From contig NW_021835076.1 of assembly GCF_006345805.1 (NCBI RefSeq), positions 1-43,574 on the forward strand: a DNA stretch of 43,574 bases, written 5' to 3'. A program made the translations under genes and the position numbers. Under the pieces are notes generated by a model. The model did no database searches. It was not told the DNA's origin and saw only the letters and a program-made list of their open reading frames with translations. Below are positions 1,006 to 34,510 of the stretch, piece by piece (the first letter of the stretch is position 1; each line of letters starts with the position of its first letter). This DNA comes from Octopus sinensis. Lineage: Eukaryota.

Positions 1006-2130
1006 ACATACATACATACATACATACATACACATATATGTACACATACATAGATATGGACGCGCCCACATACACACACATATACTCACTTAATTTTATT
1101 TACTGATATCAAGCAATGGTTTGATTATATTTCATTTGATTACATGAATTGCCGTCGACGATGCTCGCTGCTATTTCTGTTGTAGACCAACTCCGTCTCC
1201 ATATCTCTTACAGTCACTGTAGCCATGACAGAGAGGGCGGGCTCTTCATTTTCCTGAACGTTTCCTTTGGTCAAGGAGTAAACGATTTAAGGGGCAATTT
1301 CTGAAGTCTCGACTGGCGATGCTGTTCAAACGGCATCCTCCGTCTCTTCCTGTTTTTGCCGTCTCTTAACTTTACATGACAGAAAATTCTATGTGGCGCT
1401 TACTGCAATATCTAAAACAGCGTACCTTCTACTCTGCATTTATGACAGGGTAGAGTTCTGGAATGGCTCTTTAGTCTTCAGAGACCACAAAAATTTGCTT
1501 ATCTTCAGTGACTGCTTCGAATGAAATGTTGTTTTTCGTGATCTTTTTTCTTATCGCCAACCAATATTGCTCCAGTGGGATCATGTTGCTAGCAAAATTC
1601 CTTACAGTCAGTATTGCATTGCGTCTACTCATATTGGATTGTGTGCCTAACGTTCTATCTAGGCATCGGTTTTAAAGAGCAGTGTCAATGTTTCCGTCGT
1701 ATTTGCCACGGCAGATGGATGCCATACTACCTCATGCAACACCCATAACTTCTCTCAATTACCTCATTGGCTGTAAGCGGCAAACCTGCTCCACTTTGAG
1801 TGAGGCATATATTTATCAACTTTCTCTTTACCATTTGTCGACAAAATTCGTCGATAGAAGTGACTGAGACTTTGCTAACGCAACATTGCCCTAGCTTGTC
1901 CTCGGTTTCATCCTTGTCCAGTTATAGAGATTCTCTGTTTGAAGCAATATGAGCTGAGTTATATTTTTCCACTTTAAATCAAATAGCCAATGCTATTTGC
2001 ATTGAGAGAGAGAGAGAGAGGAGGATACGGAGAGAGGGAGAGAGAGGATACGGAGAGAGGAAGAGAGAGAGAGAGAGGATACGGAGAGAGGGAGAGAGAG
2101 AGTGAGAGTTGAGAATATTCCATGAGATAG

Positions 2131-2190
2131 TTTTTTTTATTTCATCTAGTTTCAGCTCACGATCTGTGGCCATGCTGGGGCACCGCCATT
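2131..2190 (-). mobile_element. Retroposon 3' tail plus poly(A), related to the SINE-A tail
   Basis: AATGGCGGTGCCCCAGCATGGCCACAGATCGTGAGCTGAAACTAGATGAAATAAAAAAAA aligns with the SINE-A end AAAGGCGGTGCTCCAGCATGGCCGCAGTCAAATGACTGAAACAAG (e.g. about 10605-10652). Confidence 0.7.
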
Positions 2191-2209
2191 AAAAAAAATA
2201 CTGCCATGT

Positions 2210-2282
2210 AGCCCCCAGTGAGAATCGAACTAACGACCCCTGGTTTCCAAGACCAGTGCTCTAACCTCTGAGCTATGGAGGC
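2210..2282 (-). tRNA. tRNA with a Thr(UGU)-type body but TGG (Pro) anticodon; probable retrocopy/pseudogene
   Basis: Sequence GCCTCCA TA GCTC AGAGGTTA GAGC A CTGGT CTTGGAA ACCAG GGGTC GTTAG TTCGATT CTCAC TGGGGGC T folds as a cloverleaf. It has a 7-bp acceptor stem, D and anticodon stems, one T-stem mismatch and discriminator T. A T8 run follows after an 11-nt trailer (2191-2198). Confidence 0.85.
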
Positions 2283-2974
2283 TCAGTTGAGAATGTTCCT
2301 TGAGAGAGTTGAGAATATTCTGCACAATGAACTTGACATGCCGAAAGTTTCAGCTCGCGGACTGCCGCGTCTTCTGACACTAGATCAAAAACAAAACCAG
2401 TCTGATCATATCACGGGAAAATCTGACATTGTCTGAGGTAGATGCAGCTAGTTTCCCTGAACGATTCCTAACTCAGGATGAGTGTTGGTTTCATGAATTT
2501 CAACCAGAGACAAAGAGACAATCCATGCTTGTGGAAACACCCACCACGCCTGTTCCAAAGAAGGCCAAGTAGATATATCAGGTTTCCTTGAACTCTTTCT
2601 AACCGAAGGCTGTTGTTGCTGATATCGAGTGAGGCATTAAAAGCACTCTCGTGTGATTGAAAAGTCCTATTTTTTAAAATCCTTTTGAAACGTTTATGCA
2701 TCGGTGTAAACTATGTTTCATGACTTTTACCTTGCTTATTGTATTCTGCTTTCTTTGACGATATTGTTGAAAAATAAAACGATAAAAGTTGCAACCCGAA
2801 CCAAAACTGTTTTATTATCTAGTATTTCACTTATTCAAAAAGGCGAAAGAATAAAACGTAAACACCTTTGTTGTACAGTGCGACACAGAACAATAGAAAT
2901 TTTTGTACGTTTAAAACCAGCGAAGACAAAAAGGAAAAAGAAATCAGTTTCGATAACACAAACAGTAACAATGG

Positions 2975-4420: not shown

Positions 4421-5243
4421 CGAGGTTGGGCTGATAAGATCATAGGCTGACTATGAAGGTGTGAAATCTTTGCAGACATTACTTTCACCTCTTTTTATTA
4501 ATAACTGCATTGTTTCTTTCCAGATAAACTGACATCTACCAGTTCAAACATTTTAGATGTAACACGTAGCTTCTCTGGAAAATGGAGAAAATTCAGCATC
4601 GTGGTGTTATCAAGTACCTGCAGAAAAAAAAGGGTTTAGCCCCCAAAGACATTCATGATGACAAGGTTGCTACATTAGGTGATGATGCTCCAGTTTTAAG
4701 GAGTGGCTGTGTGGCAAGTAGCTTGCTTACCAACCACATGATTCCGGGTTCAGTACCACTGCGTGGCATCTTGGCCAAGTGTCTTCTACTATAGCCTCAG
4801 GCTGACCAAAGCCTTGTGAGTGGATTTGGTAGACGGAAACGGAAAGAAGTCCGTCGTATATATGAATATATATGTATGTATGTGTGTGTATATGTTTGTG
4901 TGTCTGTGTTTGTCCCCCCACCCAACATCGCTTGAGAACTGATGCTGGTGTGTTTACGTCCCCGTAACTTAGAGGTTCGGCAAAAGAGTGATAGAATAAG
5001 TACTAGGCTTACAAAGAATGAATCTTGGGGTCAATTTTCTCGACTAAAGGCGGTGCTCTAGCATGGCCGCAGTCAAATGACTAAAACAAGTAAAGAGTGC
5101 AAAAGTGAGCAGCTGAACTTAGGAGGGGAAGGGAAAATCTTGAAGATGACCCAAGGTCTGGACATCCTGCAACTGCCGCCACTGAAGTAAACATTGATGG
5201 TGTTCACCACATGGTCATGGATGAAAGGCAATTGACTATAAAT
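4421..5243 (+). mobile_element. Mariner 5' half (left TIR plus transposase N-terminus) interrupted by SINE-A
   Basis: TA then CGAGGTTGGGCTGATAAGATCATAGGCTGAC (TIR-like). ORF at 4582 reads MEKIQHRGVIKYLQK..GLAPKDIHDD..ATLGDDAP. It resumes after the SINE at 5096 as VQK.AAELRRG..NLEDDPRSGHPATA..VHHMVMDERQLTIN (HTH region). Confidence 0.9.
4699..5097 (+). mobile_element. SINE-A (tRNA-derived head) nested in mariner
   Basis: AGGAGTGGCTGTGTGG head with a GGTTCAGTACC B-box-like motif, an internal TA/TG microsatellite and the tail GGCGGTGCTCTAGCATGGCC..AAGTAAAGAG. Homologous to 10267-10668 and 28352-28761. Confidence 0.9.
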
Positions 5244-5320: not shown

Positions 5321-5531
5321 GGCGGCGAGCTGGTCGAAATGCTTAGTGGTATTTCGCCTGTCTTTACGTTCTGAGTTCAAATTCCGCCGAGGTCGACTTT
5401 GCCTTTCATCCTTTCGGGATCGATTAAGTAAGCACCAGTCGCGCACTGGGGTCGATGTAATTGACTTAATCCGTTTGTCTGCCCTTGTTTGTCCCCTCGA
5501 TGTGTAGCCCCTTGTGGGCAGTAAAGAAATA
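5321..5531 (+). mobile_element. SINE-B
   Basis: GGCGGCGAGCTGG head, TTCTGAGTTCAAATTCCGCCGAGGTCGACTTTGCCTTTCATCC core and CCCCTTGTGGGCAGTAAAGAAATA tail. Confidence 0.9.
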
Positions 5532-6329
5532 ATATATATATATATGTAATCCAAATTGAGGGAGTGGAGTTGGTAAAGTTTTGGCTACATGTGTTTCCTA
5601 GCTAGCAGATCCTCTAGAGCGGTACCTAGAAGGGTACTCCGCTAGCTACTCTTCAAGTCGAAAGTCCCTTAATTATATGAAGATTACATTGTCGTTAAGG
5701 AATCCCAAATTAACTCGCCGAAGATACAATTTGAAAATGAGTGGCAAATATTAACGACTGGGGGCAGTGTAATACTATGTCAATGTGAATTACACAAAAC
5801 AAAGCATAAAATAGAAATGCCATAAAGTAACCCCTAGAAGATTCGGCGACTATTTTCCTCATCGGCAATGTTGTATTAAAAGGTCGAAGCACGTGTACCA
5901 GCATACTATATAGCAATTTATGATATCCCGAGTTGTTGCTACATAACTACACAGGTAATACTCAAAAGAATTAAGCGATGACTTTATATTATTCAATGAC
6001 AATATAATATGGAGCGCTTAAATGTATCTGTGTGCGTATTGATCTATTTTAGGGGGATAAAATAGGCAATAACTCCAAACACTAGATGTGGTTCTTTTCA
6101 GTTATACGTATGTACGAAAATTTTCATCCCACAATTTGAAATTTTTCTCGGGTTCTAGTGATCTTATAAGATCAGACAGGCAATGAAAATAGTGTTCTGA
6201 CAACCGAACTAAAAGTTAAAACAAAAGCAATGCAAGTATTCATTGGCAGTGTGACCCACCCAAACGATAATGGTTTGTGCCCTCAGTTTCAGGTCGAAAT
6301 TACTGCAAAACAAATTTTAAAAATTTATA

Positions 6330-10266: not shown

Positions 10267-10668
10267 AGCGCAGGAGTGGCTGTGTGGTAAGTAGCTTGTT
10301 TACCAACCACATGGTTCCGGGTTCAGTCCCACTGCGTGGCACCTTGGGCAAGTGTCTTCTACTATAGCCTCGGGCCGACCAATGCCTTGTGAGTGGATTT
10401 GGTAGACGGAAACTGAAAGAAGCCCGTCGTATATATTATATATATGCGTGTGTGTGTTTGTGTGTCTGTGTTTGTCCCCCTAGCATTGCTTGACAACCGA
10501 TGGTGGTGTGTTTATGTCCCCGTTACTTAGCGGTTCGGCAAAAGAGACCGATAGAATAAGTACTGGGCTTACAAAAGAATAAGTCCCGGTGTCGAGTTGC
10601 TCGATTAAAGGTGGTGCTCCAGCATGGCCGCAGTCAAATGACTGAAACAAGTAAAAGAGTAAAAGAGT
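10267..10668 (+). mobile_element. SINE-A, near full length, embedded in (TA)n
   Basis: GCGCAGGAGTGGCTGTGTGGTAAG head through AAGTAAAAGAGTAAAAGAGT tail. Confidence 0.95.
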
Positions 10669-10678
10669 ATATATGTAC

Positions 10679-11590: not shown

Positions 11591-12908
11591 CTAGCAGAAT
11601 TGCCGGCGATGCTCGGGGCTGAATTGCTTGAAAGTACTGTTAATGATTGCACTGAATTATGATGATTATTCAGGCAAATATTGATATAAGTTTACGGTGG
11701 GAGATAAGGACTTAACGATCAAACGTGTGCCATTGCATTGTTTTGGGGGAACCAAATTTCTAATGAGCATTATAGGGGCACCAACTTTAAGTTTGAGAAT
11801 GTGTGTGGTGGTAGTCCGGGGGGTTCAAAGGAATTGAGTACCTCTATTGGATAATTGATGACGTCCTCTGGGTCAGGAGTTCTATCGATAGACTTATATA
11901 CATAGACATCCCCAGGAATGAGTTTTAGCATTTCATCATTAATATGGTGAACAGTTTTATTACTCGGGGCCAGAATAGCCCTTTGGCCAATCCAATACAT
12001 ATTCTGATAATTAGCTTGTAGATCTGGGAACACTGCATCTCTGAGATCAGAAGGCGTTTTAACAATGTTACAAATGGAATCGATGGCAATATTACCATTT
12101 TCATCCCCTGGTATTTTGCCTTCGCCAAGTGCAAGGAGGGTGTGAGAAAATGCTGCTGATGTGATATTACGTCGCATATGAGCACGCATATTGGTGTGAA
12201 GTTTGAGAGTCTTCACCAGTGGCGACAATGTGGATGACTTAAGACACGCACTTACTGCATCAGCTGTATTCCCTTTGGGAATAACGGGAAGTGTTTGTCG
12301 GAAGTCCCCTGAAAGAAGTGTTATGCTTCCCATGGGAGCTGAAGAGTGTTTGATGTCTCTGAGAGATCTATCTAGTGCCTCAAGAGCACCTCTGTGGGCC
12401 ATCGTGTATTCATCCCAAACGATAAGCTTGCATCGTCTGAAGACTTCTGCCTGGTCGGAGCTGTTACTGATGTTGCAAGTTGGTGTCTCAGTCTTCGCTA
12501 AGACAAGCGGAAGCTTGAAAGTGGAGTGAGCTATCCTGCCGCCTGGCAACAAAGTAGCCGCAATTCCAGATGATGCCACAGCTAGGGCAATGCCTTGTGT
12601 CCGCCTAATCTCAGCCAATATTAATTTGTTGACAAAAGTTTTCCCAGTGCCCAAAGGAGCGTCCAGGAAAAAAATCCTCCCAGCTTTGGCCCGGACTGAA
12701 TTAACAACGGAGTTGTAAGGAACTTCTGTTCTGGAAGGAGCTTTGGCTCATTGTCGGCTATGTACTCGGCAAGCTCGTCAACATTAAAACATGTCTCACG
12801 CAGCAAATGTGAAGACAGAGTGTTTGTGCCTTCCCGGTTTGTTGAAGGTAGGCCATAGACCGGCAAGGCACTACCGCCCATTTAACGTACAGTATCTTCG
12901 AACGTAGT
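11591..12908 (-). mobile_element. Helitron remnant: PIF1-like helicase pseudogene plus intact 3' terminus
   Basis: FFLDAPLGTGKT (Walker A), LIVWDEYTM, GDFRQTLPV, LKLHTNMR, RAILAP and PPGLPPH..LKLKVGAPIMLIRNL..CNGTRL, with frameshifts at about 12654 and 11800. The 3' end has the hairpin CCGAGCATCGCCGG (11603-11616) and ends CTAG (11591-11594) followed by T. Confidence 0.95.
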
Positions 12909-16863: not shown

Positions 16864-17125
16864 TTCTTTAAGTTTCTTTTATTCTTTTATTTGTTTCAAT
16901 CATTTGACTGTGGCCATGCTGGAGTACCGCATTTAGTCGAGCAAATCGACCCGAGGACTTATTCATTGTAAGCCTAGTACTTATTCTATCGGTCTTTTCT
17001 GCCGAACCGTTAAGTGACGGGGACGTAAAGACACCAGCATCGGTTGTCAAGCGATGTTGGGGGAACAAACACAGACACACAAACATACATACATACATAT
17101 ATGTATGTATATATGTATATATATA

Positions 17126-17171
<46 letters not shown>

Positions 17172-17182
17172 TATATATATAA

Positions 17183-17256
<74 letters not shown>

Positions 17257-17718
17257 ATATATATAATATATATATATATATATTGTATATATATATATAT
17301 TATATAATATATATATATATATTATATATATATATATATAACATTAATTAAGGGTAGAAATTGATATTTATCAATTAAAACCAGTGGTCTAGCATATTAA
17401 AAAAGAATCCGAAGATTAAAATATTTATATATACCAATTAAGGACTGAACACGAAAAGTGGACAGTCAACATGCTAGATATAGACATCAAATCGCCATTC
17501 TCCACAAAAGATTATGTTCTCAAATCAAACTCAGCATATATATATATATAAATACGACGGGCTTCTTTCAGTTTCCGTCTACCAAATCCACTCACAAGGC
17601 TTTGGTTGGCCTGAGGCTATAGTAGAAGACACTTGCCCAAGGTGCCACACAGTGGGACTGAACCCGGAATCATGTGGCTGGTAAGCAAGCTACTTACCAC
17701 ACAGCCACTCCTACGTCT
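16864..17718 (-). mobile_element. SINE-A split by an expanded internal (TA)n and a 190-bp insert (about 17342-17535)
   Basis: 5' half at 17552-17718 and 3' half at 16864-17090 are both homologous to 28352-28761. Confidence 0.9.
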
Positions 17719-18715: not shown

Positions 18716-19785
18716 GTCTATTGTTGTTGTTTTTGTCTCATTTGGTCTAAAGTCGTATGACAACCACCGTTATATATATTTTGTTTATTCATTACTGTTT
18801 TCAATTTCGTTTTCGTCTCTTGTATTCACATCCGTCTTGTGCGTTCACATTCCTGTCTTCTACCAAAAATCTAATGCTTACAGCTTAGTTTTTTTTCTTG
18901 GGGCTGGCCGAGTTGGAGCAATATCAGAATTGAACAGCCGAAATTTGCTATGATGATTCGGTGTCTGACTGAAGATTGAAGGCTTCGAATGATTTGTCTG
19001 TGTTCCGTGTTCGTCCCTTCCTGTATTTCACTTCATTATATATAAAAACATTCATTCTTATATTATTGCGGCGTTACGTGCACCCCCCCCCCGTTTGTTT
19101 GTCCAATTTTAAACCCTGCACGACTTCTATACACACTGTCTTTCCTACCCGCCATTGCTTCTTCACCAACTTTTTGGCGCCCTCCGATTCTTCCCCTCTC
19201 TTCCTCCCATCCTCCTCCCCTCTTCCTCCCATCCTCCTTAATCCCTTCTTTCTCCTTTTCTCTTGGTCACTGATTCTGTCCCCTGCCTTCCACCCTCTTT
19301 GATTCCCTCTCTCTCTGTCTCTCTTTCTCTCTCTCCTGCGACCTGCTGCTTCTTAAACCATTCTGTTGGCCTTCGTATCTCGACCAACATGTGTCCCCGC
19401 TACCGAAACGGTAATTATTTCTACGCCAGCTATGTTGTTGTTGTTGTTTTTGTCTCATTTGGTCTAAAGTCGTATGACAACCACCGTTATATATATTTTG
19501 TTTATTCATTACTGTTTTCAATTTCGTTTTCGTCTCTTGTATTCACATCCGTCTTGTGCGTTCACATTCCTGTCTTCTACCAAGAAATCTAATGCTTACA
19601 GCTTAGTTTTTTTTCTTGGGGCTGGCCGAGTTGGAGCAAATATCAGAATTGAACAGCCGAAATTTGCTATGATGATTCGGTGTCTGACTGAAGATTGAAG
19701 GCTTCGAATGATTTGTCTGTGTTCCGTGTTCGTCCCTTCCTGTATTTCACGTTCATTATATATAAAAACATTCATTCTTATATAT
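18716..19785 (+). mobile_element. Tandem about 350-bp direct repeats around a pyrimidine-rich spacer; Penelope pseudo-LTR-like structure
   Basis: 18716-19070 is nearly identical to about 19432-19785. Each copy has CTGACTGAAG..CTTCGAA (hammerhead-like, degenerate). Flanked by (TA)n. Confidence 0.5.
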
Positions 19786-19856
19786 ATACATATATGTACA
19801 AATTAAATAGATATAGCAATATCTCCATCTATCTCTATCTATCCATCTCTATTCAT

Positions 19857-20839: not shown

Positions 20840-21830
20840 CGAATAGAATACGCTCAAAATTGTTCCCACCGTGACCGTCCCAATTTTTCCCTATGTTTAG
20901 TTTACTAGGGACCTCGGATCATTTCGGTTTGAACGGCAGTTTTTTTTCTAGCGGTGTCATATGAAATTGTCACCCATAATTATGACCCTAGTATCGATCT
21001 ATTGCATTTCAATGTTTTAGGGTTAGGGTTAGTTAGGGTTAGGGTTAGGGGTGGGGGAAGGGTATCTTTTTTTTCTTCACAAATGTAAATAAACCCAATC
21101 TGTTTCTTAAACGAGGGACATATTCATACGGCACAGAATGTTGTTTACCTCAATGGACGTCAGTGATTGGTTGAAATTGCAGAAATTGAAGAAAAAAAAA
21201 CAACAAATATCTTACAAACTATAGAATTTTCTCAATAAAGCCAAGAGAAAAAGAAGTTTTATAAACACATTCTACCAGTATACGAAGTTTATAAGTGTTT
21301 AGTTACGTGGAAATTATTTTAAAAAACTGCCGTTCAAACCCAAAAGATCCGGGACCTCATTATCTAACGCAATGTTTTGGCGGTACGTTCAGTTAGAGGG
21401 ACATATATCTGTTGCTTCTAGCATACCTAGCGACCACATGGAGCTCATGAAGGCCTCCTTGTTGGCTTGTGATGGTGGTAGTGGCGGTGCAGTCATGGCA
21501 ATGCTTGTGTAGTAGCGTAAGTGGTGTTGAACTTGAGAGGTGGAGCTCACGGTGTATTTATAGAAATAGCGCTGGATACTTTCAGTACTGAACGAGTAGA
21601 CCAAGGAACGAAATGGTTCCCACCGTAACCACCCCAATTTTTTCCTGTATTCAGCTAACATGGGGCCACATTATCAAATGCAATATTTTGTTGGTACGTT
21701 TAATTAGAGGGATATATATATCTGTTATTTCTAGCACTTTAAGCGACCACATGGGGTAGTACAGGCTTCCTCCTTGGCTTGTTGTGGCGGTGGTGATGGT
21801 GTAATGGTAACGTTTGTGTGGTAGCATTAG
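20840..21830. repeat. Diverged about 310-bp tandem repeat (about 3 units)
   Basis: ATTATC..GGTACGTT..TTAGAGGGA..ATCTGTT..CTAGCA..GCGACCACATGG at 21359 and 21670. TTCAGTA(T/C)TGAACGA..TTCCCACCGT..CCCAATTTTT at about 20828-20890 and 21580-21645. Confidence 0.8.
20916..21350 (+). mobile_element. MITE with about 29-bp TIRs, 8-bp TSD (GGGACCTC) and internal (TTAGGG)n; Merlin-like by inference
   Basis: TIR GGATC(A/T)TTTCGGTTTGAACGGCAGTTTTT..AAAAACTGCCGTTCAAACCCAAAAGATCC. TSD at 20908-20915 and 21351-21358. Confidence 0.9.
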
Positions 21831-23410: not shown

Positions 23411-23429
23411 ATATCAATCTTTTACATCT

Positions 23430-23537
23430 TTATCTTTTACTGCAGCCATGCAGGGAAACCTCCTTGGAGGGTTTTAGTCGAACAAATCGACCCCAGGACT
23501 TATATTGTAAGCTTAGTACTTATTCTATCAGACTCTT
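23430..23537 (-). mobile_element. SINE-A 3' fragment
   Basis: Reverse complement of GATAGAATAAGTACT..GGGGTCGATTTGTTCGACTAAA. Confidence 0.7.
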
Positions 23538-23599
23538 ATACACACACACGCACACACACACACACACAGACAGACACACACACACACACAAGCACACAC

Positions 23600-24034: not shown

Positions 24035-25946
24035 TTGACAAACTCACAAAGTTTTGTTGTGTGGATTTTACGTAAATCGTCAAGATTATGCTCGAGTTGC
24101 AAGGAACAACAACAACAGATTCAACTGCAAGAGCAACAACAAAAGCAACAACAACAACTAATTTTGCAACAACAAATGCTGCAATTAATGAAGTCGTCAG
24201 GAAAGTCAGAAAAAGTGTTCTCGCCAGACTGTGTCGCGATGTCAATAACTGAATTCAAATACAAACTTGACGGAGTTACCTTCGAAGTATACAACTGGAG
24301 ATATGAGCAAATCTTCGAGAAAGAATGTAAAGATTGGGGCGACGAAATGATAAGGCACTTAATTTTGAGAAAACTGGCGGCTGCAGGACACGGACGATAC
24401 AGTAATTATGTACTTCCAAGAAAACCTTCGGACATAAATTTTAATGACACAATACATATATTGTGTAAAATTTTCAGTGAAAAAAGCTCATTGTTCAATA
24501 TACATTGAAAGTGCCTGAACATAGAGAAAAACAACGACGAAGACTTTGTTACACATGCTGGTAGATTAAACAGGGAATGCGAGAATTTTAAGCTGGATAA
24601 ATTAACTCCAGATATGTTCAAATGCCTGATTTTTACACAGGGACTGACTGCCGAAAAGGACGCAAAAGTCAGTACTAGAATTCTTGCAAAGCTGGAGCAA
24701 AACCAGGATGTACCTCTGCAAAAAAGTGTCTGAAGAATGTGAAAGGAAACTTTCGTGTTTAATGTGAAATGATACTGTGTCGTATGCAAGACAGGACACA
24801 AGAAATTGAACGTGAAGATTGTTTTCAAGTAAAACCAGTGCGGAATAGTCTAAATAGAGATAAAGTGTCTTCTAAAAAAGACGACAAACATCAGAATAAA
24901 AATTCATGATTTTCACGCGGTGGTATGCACTTAAGGAAAAATTGTCTATTTAAAAAAGCGAAGTGTTTTCGTTGTGGTAATATAGGACATATTTCGTCTG
25001 TCTTTACGTTCAGAGTTCAATTTCCGCCGAGGTCGACTTTGCCTTTCATCCTTTCGGGGTCGATAAATTAAGTACCAGTAACGCACTGGGGTCGATATAA
25101 TCGACTTAATCCGCTTGTCCCCTCTGTGTTTAGCCCCTTGTGGGTAGTAAAGAAATAGGTAATATAGGACATATCATTTTGTCTGTCTTTACGTTCAGAG
25201 TTCAATTTCCGCCGAGGTCGACTTTGCCTTTCATCCTTTCGGGGTCGATAAATTAGTACCAGTTACGCATTGGGGTCGATATAATCGACTTAATCCGCTT
25301 GTCCCCTCTGTGTTTAGCCCCTTGTGGGTAGTAAAGAAATAGGTAATATAGGACATATCATTTTGTCTGTCTTTACGTTCAGAGTTCAATTTCCGCCGAG
25401 GTCGACTTTGCCTTTCATCCTTTCGGGGTCGATTAAATAAGTACCAGTTACGCATTGGGGTCGATATAATCGACTTAATCCGCTTGTCCCCTCTGTGTTT
25501 AGCCCCTTGTGGGTAGTAAAGAAATAGGTAATATAGGACATTATTTCGTCTGTCTTTACGTTCAGAGTTCAATTTCCGCCGAGGTCGACTTTGCCTTTCA
25601 TCCTTTCGGGGTCGATAAATTTAGTACCAGTTACGCACTGGGTCGATGTAATCGACTTAATCTGTTTCTCCTTGTTTGTTCTCTCTGTGTTTAGCCCCTT
25701 GTGGGTAGTAAAGAAATAGGTAATATAGGACTTATTTATTTCGTCTGTCTTTACGTTCAGAGTTCAAATTCCGCCGAGGTCGATTTTTCCTTTCATCCTT
25801 TCGGGGTCGATAAATTTAGTACCAGTTGCGTACTGGGGTCAATATAATCGATTGCCCCCCCCACCTCCTCCCCCAAAATTTCAGGCCTTGTGCCTAGAAT
25901 AGAAAAGAATGTAGGACACATTAAGACACACTGTTGAAAGAACGAC
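24035..25946 (+). pseudogene. Gypsy/Ty3 (Mag / K02A2.6-like) gag pseudogene with CCHC knuckle, interrupted by a SINE-B array
   Basis: TFEVYNWRYEQIF..W.DEM..LILRKL..RYSNYVLPRKPSDINFNDTIHILCKIFSEKSSLFN, stop at 24506-24508, then CLNIEK..DFVTHAGRLNRECENFKL..DMFKCLIFTQGL. Knuckle CFRCGNIGHI/(insert)/KTHC. Confidence 0.9.
24994..25907 (+). repeat. Tandem array of five 5'-truncated SINE-B units (182-192 bp) separated by gag-derived spacers
   Basis: GGTAATATAGGAC recurs at 24976, 25158, 25342, 25527 and 25719. Outer TSD-like pair AATATAGGACATATT (24979-24993) and AATGTAGGACACATT (25908-25922). Confidence 0.95.
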
Positions 25947-28351: not shown

Positions 28352-28761
28352 GGCGCAGGAGTGGCTGTGTGGTAAGTAGCTTGCTAACCAACCACATGGT
28401 TCCGGGTTCAGTCCCACTGCGTGGCATCTTGGGCAAGTGTCTTCTGCTATAGCCCCGGGCCGACCAATGTCTTGTGAGTGGATTTGGTAGACGGAAACTG
28501 AAAGAAGCCTGTCGTATATATGTATATATATATAAGTGTGTGTGTATATGTTTGTGTGTCTGTGTTTGTCCTCCTAGCATTGCTTGACAATCGATGCTGG
28601 TGTGCTTACGTCCCCGTCACTTAGCGGTTCGGCAAAAGAGACCAATAGAATAAGTACTGGGCTTACAAAGAATAAGTCCCGGGGTCGATTTGCTCGACTA
28701 AAGGCGGTGCTCCAGCATGGTCGCAGTCAAATGACTGAAACAAGTAAAAGAGTAAAAGAGT
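28352..28761 (+). mobile_element. SINE-A, full length
   Basis: GGCGCAGGAGTGGCTGTGTGGTAAG..AAGTAAAAGAGTAAAAGAGT. Confidence 0.95.
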
Positions 28762-28776
28762 AATATAAGGGAATAC

Positions 28777-29214
28777 GGATCTTTTCGGTTTGAACGGCAG
28801 TTTTTTAAAATAATTTCCACGTAACTAAACACTTATAAACTTCGTATACTGGTAGGATGTGTTTATAAAATATCTTTTTCTCTTCGCTTTATTGAGAAAA
28901 TTCTATAGTTTGTAAGATATTTGTTGTTTTTTTCTTCAATGTCTGCAATTTCAACCAATCAATGAGGTCTATTGAGGTAAACAACATTCTGTGCCATATG
29001 AATATGTCCCTCGTTTATGAAACAGATTGGGTTTATTTACATTTGTGAAGAAAAAAGATACCCTTCCCCCACCCCTAACCCTAACCCTAACCCTAACTAA
29101 CCCTAACCCTAAAACAGATTGAAATGCAATAGATCGATACTAGGGTCATAATTATGGGTGACAATTTCATATGACACCGCTAGAAAAAAACTGCCGTTGA
29201 AACCGAAAATATCC
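28777..29214 (-). mobile_element. TTAGGG-bearing MITE, copy 2 (TSD GGGAATAC)
   Basis: Reverse-orientation homologue of 20916-21350. TSD at 28769-28776 and 29215-29222; (CCCTAA)n at about 29073-29111. Confidence 0.92.
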
Positions 29215-29299: not shown

Positions 29300-30183
29300 C
29301 GAATTTATTCAGTTTTCACGCCTATCCTCATCTATAGTAATGGATGTTGGGTAATGACCAAAAGTGTCCAATTACGAATATAAGCGGCTGAAATGGGGTT
29401 TCTACGAGAGATCTCAGATCTTTTCGGTTTGAACGGCAGTTTTTTCTAGCGGTGTCATATGAAATTGTCACCCATAATTATGACCCTACTATTGATCTAT
29501 TGCATTTCAATCTGTTTTAGGCTTAGGGTTAGTTAGGGTTAGGGTTAAGGTTAGAGTTAGGGGTGGGAGAAGGGTATCTTTTTTTCTTCACAAATGTAAA
29601 TAAACCCAATCTGTTTCTTAAACGAGGGACATATTCATACGGCACACCTCAATGGACGTCAGTGATTGGTTGAAATTGCAGAAATTGAAGAAAAAAAAAC
29701 AACATCTTACAAACTATAGAATATTCTCAATAAAGCCAAGAGAAAAAGATACTTTATAAACACATTCTACCAGTATACGAAGTTTAACATTTTTTAGTTA
29801 CCAATAAATTATGTTAAAAACTGCCGTTCAAACCGAAAAGATCCGAGATCTCGAGAGTAATGTTATTCGACAGAGTGCGTAGCTCGGAGTTCAAGTCTCG
29901 CCGCTACTTCTCTGCACTGAGGAGGTATCACGGACATGTAAGTAGAATGCCGTAGGAAAGAATTGCAAAACAGATTCTTCAAGCCGAGGGAAGTGGCGGG
30001 AGACCTTGGGGTAGACCAAGAATGAGATGGTTGGATAATAACTAAAGTTTCAGTTAATCACGCTTGGAAATCCAACCAAAAAATGTAATCGTGATTGCTT
30101 CTGATTGGACTCTATGAAAGGTACCACAGGATTCTTCTTCCAAGAGCCTCTCAAGACTAATGGAAGAAAAGATGGTGGGATGC
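29300..30183 (+). mobile_element. RTE-like LINE 3' fragment interrupted by MITE copy 3
   Basis: SVFTPILIYSNGCWVMT..AAEMGFLREIS | VMLFDRVRSSE..YHGHVSRMP*ERIAKQIL..GRPWGRPRMRWLDN. Confidence 0.8.
29416..29844 (+). mobile_element. TTAGGG-bearing MITE, copy 3 (TSD GAGATCTC)
   Basis: TIRs as in copy 1; TSD at 29408-29415 and 29845-29852. Confidence 0.92.
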
Positions 30184-30521: not shown

Positions 30522-31219
30522 CAGTGATTCTCAACCATTTTTTCCTCTATGAACCCCTTTGAATACTAGTTTATTCTAGTGGATCCTGCTCCATAGCCAT
30601 TCCATGTTTAAAAGCTGGCTTCATAGATACTTCTTTCAAAATTACTATTTTGTTTTTCGCACATTCTCTGAGAGAACACGTTTCAGTGACCAGAAACTAT
30701 ATTAAACTATGGAAAGCATTAGAGAAAAGAACCTAGTTATTTCTTGCAGTAAATACATCCAAATCAATTTTTTTTTCATGGACACTTAATTCCGCCGAGG
30801 TCGACTTTGCCTTTCATCCTTTCGGGGACGATAAATTAAGTACCAGTTTCGCACTGGGGTCGATTTAATCGACTTAATCCGTTTGTCTGTCCTTGTTTTT
30901 CCCCTCTATGTTTAGCCCCTTGTGGGCAATAAAGAAACAGATACTTATTTTATCAACTCTGAACGATAAAAGTCAAAGTCGTGTACGGCTGGATTTGAAC
31001 CCAGGACGTAAAGAGCTGCAAGAAATGCCGCTAAGTAGTTTGCCCGCTGTGGGAATACTTCTAACAGCTCACTGCCTTAGTCACGAGAACAATAACAAGA
31101 GTAACAACAATAACAGCAACGATACCATGGATTACAATTTACAATTTTCCATGCGCGGACCCCCAAAAATTCTTATATGGATCCCCAAGGGTTATATAGA
31201 TTCTGGTTGAGAACTACCG
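30522..31219. mobile_element. hAT (Charlie-like) MITE containing a SINE-B plus flank insertion
   Basis: TIRs CAGTGATTCTCAACC (30522-30536) and GGTTGAGAACTACCG (31205-31219). Degenerate 8-bp TSD GTCTAGGA / ATCTATGA (NTCTAGAN-like). Confidence 0.7.
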
Positions 31220-33517: not shown

Positions 33518-33934
33518 TTTTTTCTTTACTACCCACAAGGGGCTAAACATAGAGGGGACAAACAAGGACAGACAAAGGGATTAAGTCGATTACATCGACC
33601 CCAGTGCGAAACTGGTATTTTATTTAATGATCCCGAAAGGATGAAAGGCAAATTCAACCTCGGCGCAATTTGAACTCAGAACGTAATGGCAGACGAAATA
33701 CCTATTTCTTTACTACCCATAAGGGGCTAAACACAGAGAGGACAAACAAGGACAGACAAACGGATTAAGTCGATTACGTCGACCCCAGTGTGTAACTGGT
33801 ACTTAATTTATCAACCTCGAAAGGATGAAAGGCGAAATCGACCTCGGCGGAATTTGAACTCAGAACGTAGCGGCAGACGAAATACGGCTACGCTTTTCGC
33901 CCGGCGTGCAAACGTTTCTGCCAGCTCGCCGCCC
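33518..33934 (-). mobile_element. SINE-B dimer with 18-bp TSD
   Basis: TSD TTATAACGGTCACCATAT at 33500-33517 and 33937-33954; internal junction AAAGAAATA|GGTATTTCGTC at about 33702. Confidence 0.92.
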
Positions 33935-34094
33935 TATTATAACGGTCACCATATATAAAAACAATCATGATTCTACAACATCTACAAGTTAACGAGGAAG
34001 TCTCTATATGATCACTCAGACTAGTAGGAATAGCAGTTAGACCTACCGGAGGATTACATTGACCCCAGTGCTCGAGTGATACTTATTTTATCAA

Positions 34095-34510
34095 GGCGGC
34101 GAGCTGGCAGAAACGTTAGCACACCGGGCGAAATGCTTAGCGGTATTTCGTCTGCCGCTACGTTCTCAGTTCAAATTCCACCGAGGTCGACTTTGCCTTT
34201 CATCCTTTCGGGGTCGATAAATTAAGTACCAGTTTCGCACTGGGGTCGATGTAATCGACTTAATCCGTTTGTCTGTCCTTGTTTCCCCCTCTATGTTTAG
34301 CCCCTTGTGGGTAATAAAGAAATAGGTATTGCGTCTGTCGTTGCGTTCTGAGTTCAAATTCCGCCGAGGTCGACTTTGCCCTTCATCCTTTCGGGGTCGA
34401 TAAATTACGTACTAGTTTCGCACTGGGGTCGATGTAATCGACTTAATCCGTTTGTCTGTCCTTGTTTGTCCCCTCTATATTTAGCCCCTTGTGGGCAATA
34501 AAGAAACAGA
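34095..34510 (+). mobile_element. SINE-B dimer
   Basis: Head at 34095; junction AAAGAAATA|GGTATTGCGTC at 34324/34325. Confidence 0.92.

What the first reader, a model, noticed from the sequence alone, without database searches (positions are those of the whole stretch)
2107..2308. Pre-tRNA fused to a retroposon tail: a U6/L1-style chimera or SINE caught at birth
Seen: on the minus strand a 154-bp insert (2131-2284) reads GA leader + complete 73-nt tRNA + 11-nt trailer + T8 + about 50-nt tail homologous to the SINE-A 3' end + A8. It is flanked by 24-bp direct repeats (AGTTGAGAATATTCCATGAGATAG at 2107-2130, AGTTGAGAATGTTCCTTGAGAGAG at 2285-2308; 3 mismatches). Both flanks are mariner transposase sequence, so the tRNA arrived after the mariner. 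Known: mammalian U6/L1 chimeras join a full Pol III transcript ending in oligo-U to a LINE 3' end, and SINEs are thought to arise as tRNA head + LINE tail. Inference: a LINE RT switched template from a retroposon tail to an unprocessed pre-tRNA (leader and trailer retained, no CCA). The internal T8 should terminate Pol III before the tail, predicting a dead-end single copy rather than a family.
Basis: partly seen in the sequence, partly recalled or inferred. Interest (0 to 1): 0.75.

Follow-up and report, generated by a model that had tools for sequence, protein, structure and literature searches.

The report
Pre-tRNA fused to SINE tail retrocopy
A 154-base insert inside a decayed mariner transposon, probably in an octopus genome, is an unprocessed threonine-type tRNA transcript joined head-to-tail to the 3' end of a SINE-like retroposon; this most likely copies the known U6/LINE chimeras, but it could not be shown to be a one-off.

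Summary
On the minus strand, 2284-2131 reads GA, a 73-nt tRNA (Rfam 62.8 bits), an 11-nt trailer, T8, a 52-nt tail and A8. A profile of the window's CORE-type SINE tails, built without the insert, hits the tail at E=2e-5. Both flanks are one mariner copy (1969-2569).

Corrections:
- The tRNA body is Thr(TGT)-type (64/73 identical to human tRNA-Thr-TGT), but its anticodon now reads TGG.
- The mariner segment that forms the 24-bp repeat occurs once in relatives and three times here, next to a GA minisatellite grown from the mariner's own GAGAGAG. The repeat is therefore either a 24-26-bp target-site duplication or a slippage triplet with a 2-4-bp duplication.

Best reading (about 0.55): one LINE-mediated event joined a pre-tRNA ending in oligo-U to a retroposon tail. 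That is a new member of the known chimeric-retrocopy kind. U6 chimeras with L1, L2 and RTE LINEs, tRNA/L1 chimeras and pre-tRNA retropseudogenes are all published.

Copy number, the parent tRNA gene and the empty site could not be tested, because no cephalopod DNA was reachable. "SINE at birth" remains speculation, and T8 argues for a dead end.

The parts
2283..2284 (-). 2-nt 5' leader GA. It would be 4 nt (CTGA) if the flanking array, rather than a TSD, explains the repeat.
   Evidence: Sequence between the repeat copy and tRNA position 1.
2210..2282 (-). Complete 73-nt tRNA with a Thr(TGT)-type body and anticodon TGG. It has no CCA and one broken T-stem pair.
   Evidence: Rfam tRNA 62.8 bits; ARAGORN; cloverleaf MFE -27.8 kcal/mol; 64/73 identical to human tRNA-Thr-TGT-1-1 with two compensated pairs.
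2199..2209 (-). 11-nt 3' trailer ACATGGCAGTA.
   Evidence: It matches nothing else in the window.
2191..2198 (-). T8, a Pol III terminator-type run (the oligo-U end of the primary transcript). It marks the junction with the tail.
   Evidence: Runs of A or T of at least 8 occur only 22 times in 43.5 kb.
2139..2190 (-). 52-nt retroposon 3' tail. It is homologous to, but diverged from, the 3' end of the window's CORE-type SINE-A. Hairpin 1 is kept and hairpin 2 is altered.
   Evidence: nhmmer profile built without this sequence, E=2.2e-5, model positions 140-188 of 206; alignment; folds.
2131..2138 (-). A8 tail. Two of the A's may belong to the target.
2107..2130 (.). Left copy of the 24-bp direct repeat (head1 + tail1 of the mariner-derived 22-bp unit).
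   Evidence: 21/24 identical to 2285-2308.
2285..2308 (.). Right copy of the 24-bp direct repeat (AG + head2 + tail2). It runs directly into the mariner reading frame: ...LER|VENILH.
1969..2010 (+). Upstream part of the same mariner copy (TLNQIANAICIER), ending in the first copy of the repeated segment (tail0, 2000-2010).
   Evidence: tblastn gives 7/7 and 6/7 residue matches in the right order and frame; 27/32 nt identical to L003; joining 1971-2010 to 2309 onward reads in frame.
2011..2108 (.). GA-rich minisatellite (periods 2, 23 and 31) grown from the mariner's GAGAGAG. It separates the left repeat copy from the rest of the mariner.
   Evidence: TRF; the repeat finder.
2309..2569 (+). Downstream part of the interrupted mariner transposase pseudogene (VENILHNELDMPKVSARGLPRLLTLDQK...FQPETKRQS...PKKAK, with stops and one frameshift).
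   Evidence: Best homologue is Octopus bimaculoides SETMAR-like, E=8e-19; alignment; blastn/tblastx to mariner loci L001-L003.

Best explanation
The insert is a dead retrocopy made in a single LINE-driven reverse-transcription event from two RNAs.

Inferred sequence of events: a LINE reverse transcriptase started target-primed reverse transcription on the A-tailed 3' end of a CORE-SINE-like retroposon RNA (or of its partner LINE). After about 52 nt it continued onto the oligo-U 3' end of an unprocessed nuclear pre-tRNA of the Thr(UGU) type. The continuation happened either by template switching or because the two RNAs had already been ligated. The enzyme copied the pre-tRNA to its 5' end, and the product was sealed, antisense, into an old mariner transposase pseudogene.

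Since then the copy has decayed: the anticodon changed from TGT to TGG and one T-stem pair broke. Because T8 lies between the Pol III promoter boxes in the tRNA and the tail that the LINE recognises, a Pol III transcript of this locus should stop before the tail. The locus should therefore not propagate.

Shown: the anatomy, the homologies and the interruption of the mariner. Inferred: RNA mediation, a single event, the joining mechanism and the non-propagation.
For: - Full-length tRNA with 2-nt leader, 11-nt trailer, T8 and no CCA. This is the form of a Pol III primary or 5'-processed transcript.
- The tRNA body is 64/73 identical to human tRNA-Thr-TGT, with compensated pairs 2:71 and 50:64. 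It scores 62.8 bits, while none of the SINE heads in the window reaches Rfam's threshold. That fits recent derivation from a true tRNA gene rather than an old SINE head.
- Tail homology to the SINE-A 3' end starts at the T8 junction, runs in the same orientation as the tRNA and ends in A8. The retained part covers the two-hairpin region of the SINE tail.
- The insert sits between contiguous pieces of one mariner copy. Joining 1971-2010 to 2309 onward reads in frame.
- Flanking direct repeats are 21/24.
- The insert is single copy in the window.
- Precedent: U6 chimeras made by template switching are documented for L1, L2 and RTE clades, and pre-tRNA retropseudogenes are known (PMC4476161). tRNA/LINE-1 chimeras are reported in primates (10.1101/2025.02.02.635956).
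Against: - The TSD is ambiguous. The repeated mariner segment is single in relatives but triple here, next to a minisatellite. The repeat may therefore predate the insertion, leaving only a 2-4-nt duplication.
- The four SINE-A copies in the window show no clear adjacent TSD, so a 24-bp one would be unusual for the same machinery.
- The nick site (AGTT/GAGA) is not L1-like.
- Eight U's is long for a Pol III transcript end.
- No parent gene, partner LINE, second copy or empty site could be examined.
- Octopus genomes are reported to hold about 900 computationally defined SINE families (PMC13282606). That raises the prior that this is a member of some small family.
Confidence: 0.55

Rival explanations
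1. It is one member of a low- or moderate-copy SINE-like family, or the daughter of a master locus. In the master, a 5'-truncated SINE or LINE tail had inserted at the T-run terminator of a tRNA-Thr gene. Rare Pol III read-through transcripts (tRNA + trailer + U-run + tail + A-run) were then retroposed through the tail.
For: - It has the head-plus-tail architecture of a tRNA-derived SINE.
- Octopus genomes are very rich in SINEs, with about 900 automatically defined families. The window alone holds five SINE-A copies.
- T-runs followed by A's are typical retroposon target sites (established knowledge for L1-type endonucleases).
Against: - T8 is a strong Pol III terminator, so read-through should be rare.
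- There is only one copy in 43.5 kb, against five SINE-A copies.
- The tRNA is far better preserved than the SINE heads.
- Retention of a gene-like trailer is not a feature of known SINE heads (own knowledge).
Confidence: 0.2
2. It is two independent events or a DNA-level capture. Either a 5'-truncated tail inserted first and a tailless pre-tRNA retrocopy later landed exactly at its 5' edge, or a stretch of genomic DNA (a tRNA gene plus downstream sequence) was copied in as filler during double-strand-break repair in an unstable minisatellite region.
For: - If the 24-bp repeat is a pre-existing array, nothing ties the two halves to one event.
- The site is demonstrably unstable, with a GA minisatellite and a 22-bp unit triplication.
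- Tailless pre-tRNA retropseudogenes exist in mammals (cited in PMC4476161).
Against: - Exact abutment of the oligo-T end to the tail's 5' end, in the same orientation, is improbable for independent hits.
- The insert's ends coincide with RNA ends: 2-4 nt before tRNA position 1, and an A-run. Arbitrary DNA breakpoints would not be expected to do this.
Confidence: 0.1
3. It is a resident, possibly functional, tRNA gene with its own terminator that happens to lie beside a SINE-tail fragment. On this view the flanking repeats are only the local tandem array.
For: It has a complete cloverleaf, tRNA-like A and B box regions, and a terminator 11 nt downstream.
Against: - It lies inside a mariner reading frame whose two sides are otherwise contiguous, so it arrived by insertion.
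- A Thr-type body with a Pro anticodon and a broken T-stem pair indicates a pseudogene.
Confidence: 0.05

Closest known systems
U6/LINE chimeric retrocopies (U6/L1 in mammals; U6 with L2 and RTE clades in other vertebrates), formed by template switching or prior RNA ligation
   Same: A full-length Pol III transcript ending in its oligo-U, in sense orientation, is joined to a 5'-truncated retroposon 3' end with an A tail and inserted as one unit (PMC4476161).
   Different: The 5' partner is a pre-tRNA rather than U6. The 3' partner is a SINE-like tail of unknown LINE affiliation in a mollusc. The TSD is not secure, the target site is not L1-like, and only one locus is known.
tRNA/LINE-1 chimeric insertions in primates (bioRxiv 10.1101/2025.02.02.635956)
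   Same: tRNA sequence and a LINE-derived 3' part lie within one insertion.
   Different: Those are mostly tRNA halves in antisense orientation, ascribed to twin priming (21 loci). Here the tRNA is complete, unprocessed at its 3' end and in sense orientation.
Pre-tRNA 'tailless' retropseudogenes (Schmitz et al. 2004, as cited in PMC4476161)
   Same: The retrocopy derives from a nuclear, unprocessed tRNA precursor.
   Different: Those lack any retroposon tail or A tail. This one carries both.
tRNA-derived, LINE-tailed SINEs, such as the CORE-SINEs (octopus OR2, mammalian MIR), and the template-switch model of SINE birth
   Same: tRNA head with internal promoter boxes plus a tail shared with a retroposon family in the same genome. 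The window's SINE-A has a MIR-like CORE motif.
   Different: There is no body region. A complete trailer and a T8 terminator lie between head and tail. It is single copy in the window, and no evidence of amplification is available.

Membership tests
Bipartite chimeric retrocopy (U6/LINE type) | 5' part is a complete small Pol III RNA in sense orientation, ending at its own oligo-U | tested here: met
   73-nt tRNA, 11-nt trailer and T8, with no CCA.
Bipartite chimeric retrocopy (U6/LINE type) | 3' part is a 5'-truncated retroposon 3' end in the same orientation, followed by an A tail | tested here: met
   Profile hit E=2.2e-5 to the last ~65 positions of SINE-A, followed by A8.
Bipartite chimeric retrocopy (U6/LINE type) | One target-site duplication brackets both parts | tested here: inconclusive
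   A 21/24 repeat brackets the insert. However, the same mariner segment is present three times against once in relatives, beside a minisatellite. The TSD could be 24-26 bp or only 2-4 bp.
Bipartite chimeric retrocopy (U6/LINE type) | The junction is unique, and the two parts have separate source loci | not testable with these tools
   No cephalopod DNA was found in the searchable collections. The insert is single copy within the window.
Bipartite chimeric retrocopy (U6/LINE type) | L1-type endonuclease site (TTTT/AA) at the insertion point. This applies only to L1-driven cases. | tested here: not met
   The inferred nick context is AGTT/GAGA on the + strand. That is compatible with a non-L1 LINE.
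tRNA-derived SINE | tRNA-related head with A and B box regions plus a tail shared with a LINE or SINE lineage | tested here: met
   The partner LINE itself was not identified.
tRNA-derived SINE | The whole unit can be transcribed by Pol III, with no strong internal terminator | tested here: not met
   T8 lies between head and tail. Termination at T runs is established knowledge and was not assayed here.
tRNA-derived SINE | Many dispersed copies with different flanks | not testable with these tools
   One copy in 43.5 kb, against five SINE-A copies.
Functional tRNA gene | Intact cloverleaf, and an anticodon that matches the body's identity | tested here: not met
   Thr(TGT)-type body with anticodon TGG and a T51.C63 mismatch.
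Mariner (Tc1/mariner) transposase pseudogene, as the host of the insertion | Collinear similarity to mariner transposases on both sides of the insert | tested here: met
   1969-2010 and 2285-2569 on the + strand match consecutive residues of mariner homologues.

The most novel reading that the evidence does not exclude
This locus is a fossil of the first step of SINE genesis by a non-L1 ('stringent') LINE. Its reverse transcriptase jumped from the tail it recognises onto a pre-tRNA still carrying its oligo-U. On this reading octopus genomes contain many such independent pre-tRNA-tail chimeras from different tRNA genes. The few that lost the T-run would have founded some of the hundreds of small SINE families reported for Octopus. 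That would turn the template-switch model of SINE birth into something countable in one genome.
Probability: 0.12. Interest if true: 0.7.

Novelty: new member of a known kind. Interest (0 to 1): 0.4.

Why it matters
SINEs are thought to arise when a LINE reverse transcriptase joins a tRNA to a LINE tail, but intermediates are rarely seen. Published tRNA/LINE chimeras are mostly antisense half-tRNAs in primates. A complete, sense-oriented pre-tRNA still carrying its trailer and terminator, fused to a SINE-type tail in a mollusc, would be a clean example of that intermediate. It would also show why most such products die: the terminator blocks transcription of the tail. As a single unverified locus it is an anecdote. 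Its value is as a search template (tRNA + trailer + Tn + tail + An) for a genome-wide census in cephalopods.

Tried and rejected
- **Junction peptides.** I searched the 5.8-billion-protein collection with six-frame peptides of the trailer/T8/tail junction to find other copies. There were 0 hits.
- **SINE-A peptide.** The same search with a conserved SINE-A antisense peptide, to see whether any octopus non-genic DNA is indexed, also gave 0 hits. The first negative is therefore uninformative.
- **Exact-pattern scans.** Metagenome contigs gave 0 for the trailer junction and 0 for the tail. Prokaryote genome contigs gave 0 for the tail.
- **Contig look-ups.** Neither a window ORF nor the Octopus bimaculoides mariner protein was on record. 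The mariner relatives that could be fetched (L001-L003) carry no SINE-A, so they are probably not cephalopod.
- **Solved structures.** A PDB sequence search with the mariner fragment gave nothing useful.
- **Literature search by sequence.** Searching papers for SINE-A or tail sequence strings gave 0.
- **Idea rejected: U8 pairs with A8.** The thought was that this tethers the two RNAs, but the minimum-energy fold of the insert does not pair them.
- **Idea rejected: part of the tail is mariner-derived.** Positions 2148-2166 match mariner 2346-2364 at 16/19. The same stretch aligns almost as well to SINE-A, and the match is near chance level.
- **Early reading rejected: the left flank is not mariner.** The mariner seemed to be truncated exactly at the repeat. 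This was overturned when 1969-2010 proved to be the upstream mariner sequence.

Full report
**What is there**

Read on the minus strand, 2284-2131 is GA, a 73-nt tRNA (2282-2210), ACATGGCAGTA (2209-2199), T8 (2198-2191), a 52-nt segment (2190-2139) and A8 (2138-2131). That is 154 nt in all.

Rfam's tRNA model matches 2282-2210 end to end at 62.8 bits (gathering score 29), with a single non-standard pair in the T stem. It is the only Rfam hit in the 43.5-kb window. ARAGORN finds the same gene and reads the anticodon as TGG. The sequence folds into a cloverleaf as its minimum-energy structure.

**Identity of the tRNA**

Against the human tRNA-Thr-TGT-1-1 sequence printed in PMC10359600, the tRNA is 64/73 identical without gaps. 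The differences fall as follows:
- Four form two compensated pairs (2:71 and 50:64), so the octopod parent probably had them.
- One (G51 to T) breaks a T-stem pair.
- One changes the anticodon from TGT to TGG.
- Three lie in loops.

It is therefore a Thr(UGU)-type tRNA that has begun to decay. There is no CCA. An 11-nt trailer followed by a T run is the normal downstream arrangement of a eukaryotic tRNA gene (established knowledge).

**The tail**

The window holds four full copies and one fragment of a roughly 400-bp SINE ('SINE-A'): 4699-5105, 10268-10672, 16868-17712 (minus strand), 28352-28766 and 23416-23540. SINE-A has a MIR-like CORE motif. Together with the best mariner hit being Octopus bimaculoides, this points to an octopod genome and an OR2-like CORE-SINE. 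The OR2 assignment is from memory and was not tested.

A profile built from the four SINE-A 3' halves alone finds 2192-2144(-) at E=2.2e-5. It aligns to model positions 140-188 of 206, that is the 3' end, beginning at the T8/TAA boundary and in the same orientation as the tRNA. Identity is about 88% over the first 27 nt and 61-66% over 62 nt. The donor was therefore a related subfamily or the partner LINE, not SINE-A itself.

SINE-A tails fold into two hairpins. The insert keeps hairpin 1. In hairpin 2 it has one C-G to U-A double change and one disrupted pair.

**The flanks**

Right of the insert, 2285-2569 is a mariner transposase pseudogene. Left of the insert there seemed at first to be only a GA-rich satellite. 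However, 1969-2010 encodes TLNQIANAICIER, the residues that precede VENILH in mariner relatives, and is 27/32 identical to the mariner locus L003. Joining 1971-2010 directly to 2309 gives an in-frame TLNQIANAICIER|VENILHNELDMPKVSAR.

The insert therefore interrupts one mariner copy, and it arrived after the mariner. The GA minisatellite (2011-2108; periods 2, 23 and 31) has grown out of the mariner's own GAGAGAG.

**Is the 24-bp repeat a TSD?**

The repeat is real (21/24, or 23/26). But the mariner junction CATTGAGAGAG|TTGAGAATATT is single in L001-L003 and occurs three times here:
- tail0 2000-2010, then the GA minisatellite, then head1 2109-2119
- tail1 2120-2130, then the insert, then (AG) head2 2287-2297
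- tail2 2298-2308, then head3 2309-2319

A TSD can explain one extra copy, not two. Two models remain:
- **M1:** one 22-bp slippage duplication, then an insertion with a 24-26-bp TSD that happens to equal one period.
- **M2:** a 3 x 22-bp array formed by slippage, then an insertion with a 2-4-bp duplication. In this case the leader may be CTGA and the tail A6.

An insertion into a tandem array always mimics a TSD of one period, so adjacency does not discriminate. The neighbouring minisatellite shows the site is slippage-prone. The four SINE-A copies show no clear adjacent TSD. L1-Tx1-type LINEs, which typically make long TSDs, are however reported as active in Octopus. I treat M1 and M2 as about equally likely. 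An empty orthologous site would settle it.

**Mechanism**

Under either model, the ends of the insert coincide with RNA ends: 2-4 nt before tRNA position 1, and an A run. The two halves abut exactly at the oligo-T, in the same orientation. That is the signature of the U6/LINE chimeras.

Those chimeras are attributed to template switching of the LINE reverse transcriptase and are documented for L1, L2 and RTE clades. Pre-tRNA retropseudogenes show that nuclear tRNA precursors are accessible to LINE machinery (PMC4476161). tRNA/L1 chimeras were recently catalogued in primates, but they are mostly antisense half-tRNAs.

My best explanation, at about 0.55, is a single chimeric retroposition of a pre-tRNA-Thr plus a retroposon tail. 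The sequence alone cannot separate template switching from RNA ligation before reverse transcription.

**Rivals**

- **A small SINE-like family, or a daughter of a master locus, about 0.2.** In the master, a tail would have inserted at a tRNA gene's terminator. About 900 SINE 'families' are reported for O. vulgaris, which raises this prior.
- **Two independent events or DNA-level filler capture, about 0.1.**
- **A resident tRNA gene, about 0.05.** This is contradicted by its position inside a contiguous mariner frame and by its mismatched anticodon.

**What could not be done**

All need the octopod genome, which none of the collections holds. The only copy-number statement possible is one copy in 43.5 kb, against five SINE-A copies.

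**Verdict**

This is a new member of a known kind of chimeric retrocopy, of moderate interest, mainly as a template for a genome-wide census.

Noticed in passing
window 4573-5243 (+) versus 1969-2569 (+): A second mariner piece holds the N-terminus (MEKIQHRGVIKYL... to ...MVMDERQLTIN) and is itself split by SINE-A at 4699-5098. It ends at ACTATAAAT (5243), exactly where the piece hosting the chimera begins (ACTTTAAAT, 1971). The two pieces are complementary with a 9-nt overlap but in permuted order: the 3' piece lies 3.26 kb to the left of the 5' piece on the same strand. Possible causes are a large insertion with a 9-bp TSD plus a segmental duplication, a misassembly, or chance at about 1-2%. 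No larger repeat in the window explains it.
   Followed up: partly
window 2011-2108: A GA-rich minisatellite (periods 2, 23 and 31, with GGATACGG interspersed) has grown out of the GAGAGAG that encodes E-R-E in the mariner reading frame. It is a clear case of a microsatellite or minisatellite born inside a transposase pseudogene.
   Followed up: yes
window 4699-5105, 10268-10672, 16868-17712(-), 28352-28766, 23416-23540(-): There are five copies or fragments of a roughly 400-bp tRNA-headed SINE. It has a MIR-like CORE motif (ACCTTGGGCAAGT), an internal microsatellite that is greatly expanded in one copy, a two-hairpin 3' tail and (GTAAAAGA)n ends. None shows a clear adjacent TSD.
   Followed up: partly
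window 24976-25851, 33521-33933, 34093-34506; solo units at 5332-5537 and 30788-31124: A roughly 185-bp unit with a tRNA-like start (GGCGGCGAGCTGGTCGAAATGCTTAGTGG...) occurs both as solo SINE-like copies and as tandem arrays of 2-4.7 units in both orientations. It shares a stretch with SINE-A (profile positions about 84-148).
   Followed up: no
window 11770-12654 (-): A 294-aa ORF carries a strong PIF1-like helicase domain (E=1e-51). It is probably a Helitron remnant.
   Followed up: no
window 2148-2166 versus 2346-2364: The middle of the chimera's tail is 16/19 identical to mariner sequence 198 bp away, on the same strand (AGTTTCAGCTCACGATCTG / AGTTTCAGCTCGCGGACTG). I judged it a near-chance resemblance, because the stretch aligns about as well to SINE-A.
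   Followed up: partly
window 18721-19066 versus 19438-19787; 20903-21358, 28776-29213, 29403-29852: One pair is a 350-bp direct duplication at 98.9% identity. A separate roughly 450-bp repeat family has three copies, two of which form an inverted pair immediately downstream of a SINE-A copy.
   Followed up: no
window 24035-24508 (+): An ORF has a DUF7083 domain (E=2e-13) and lies just upstream of the 185-bp tandem array.
   Followed up: no
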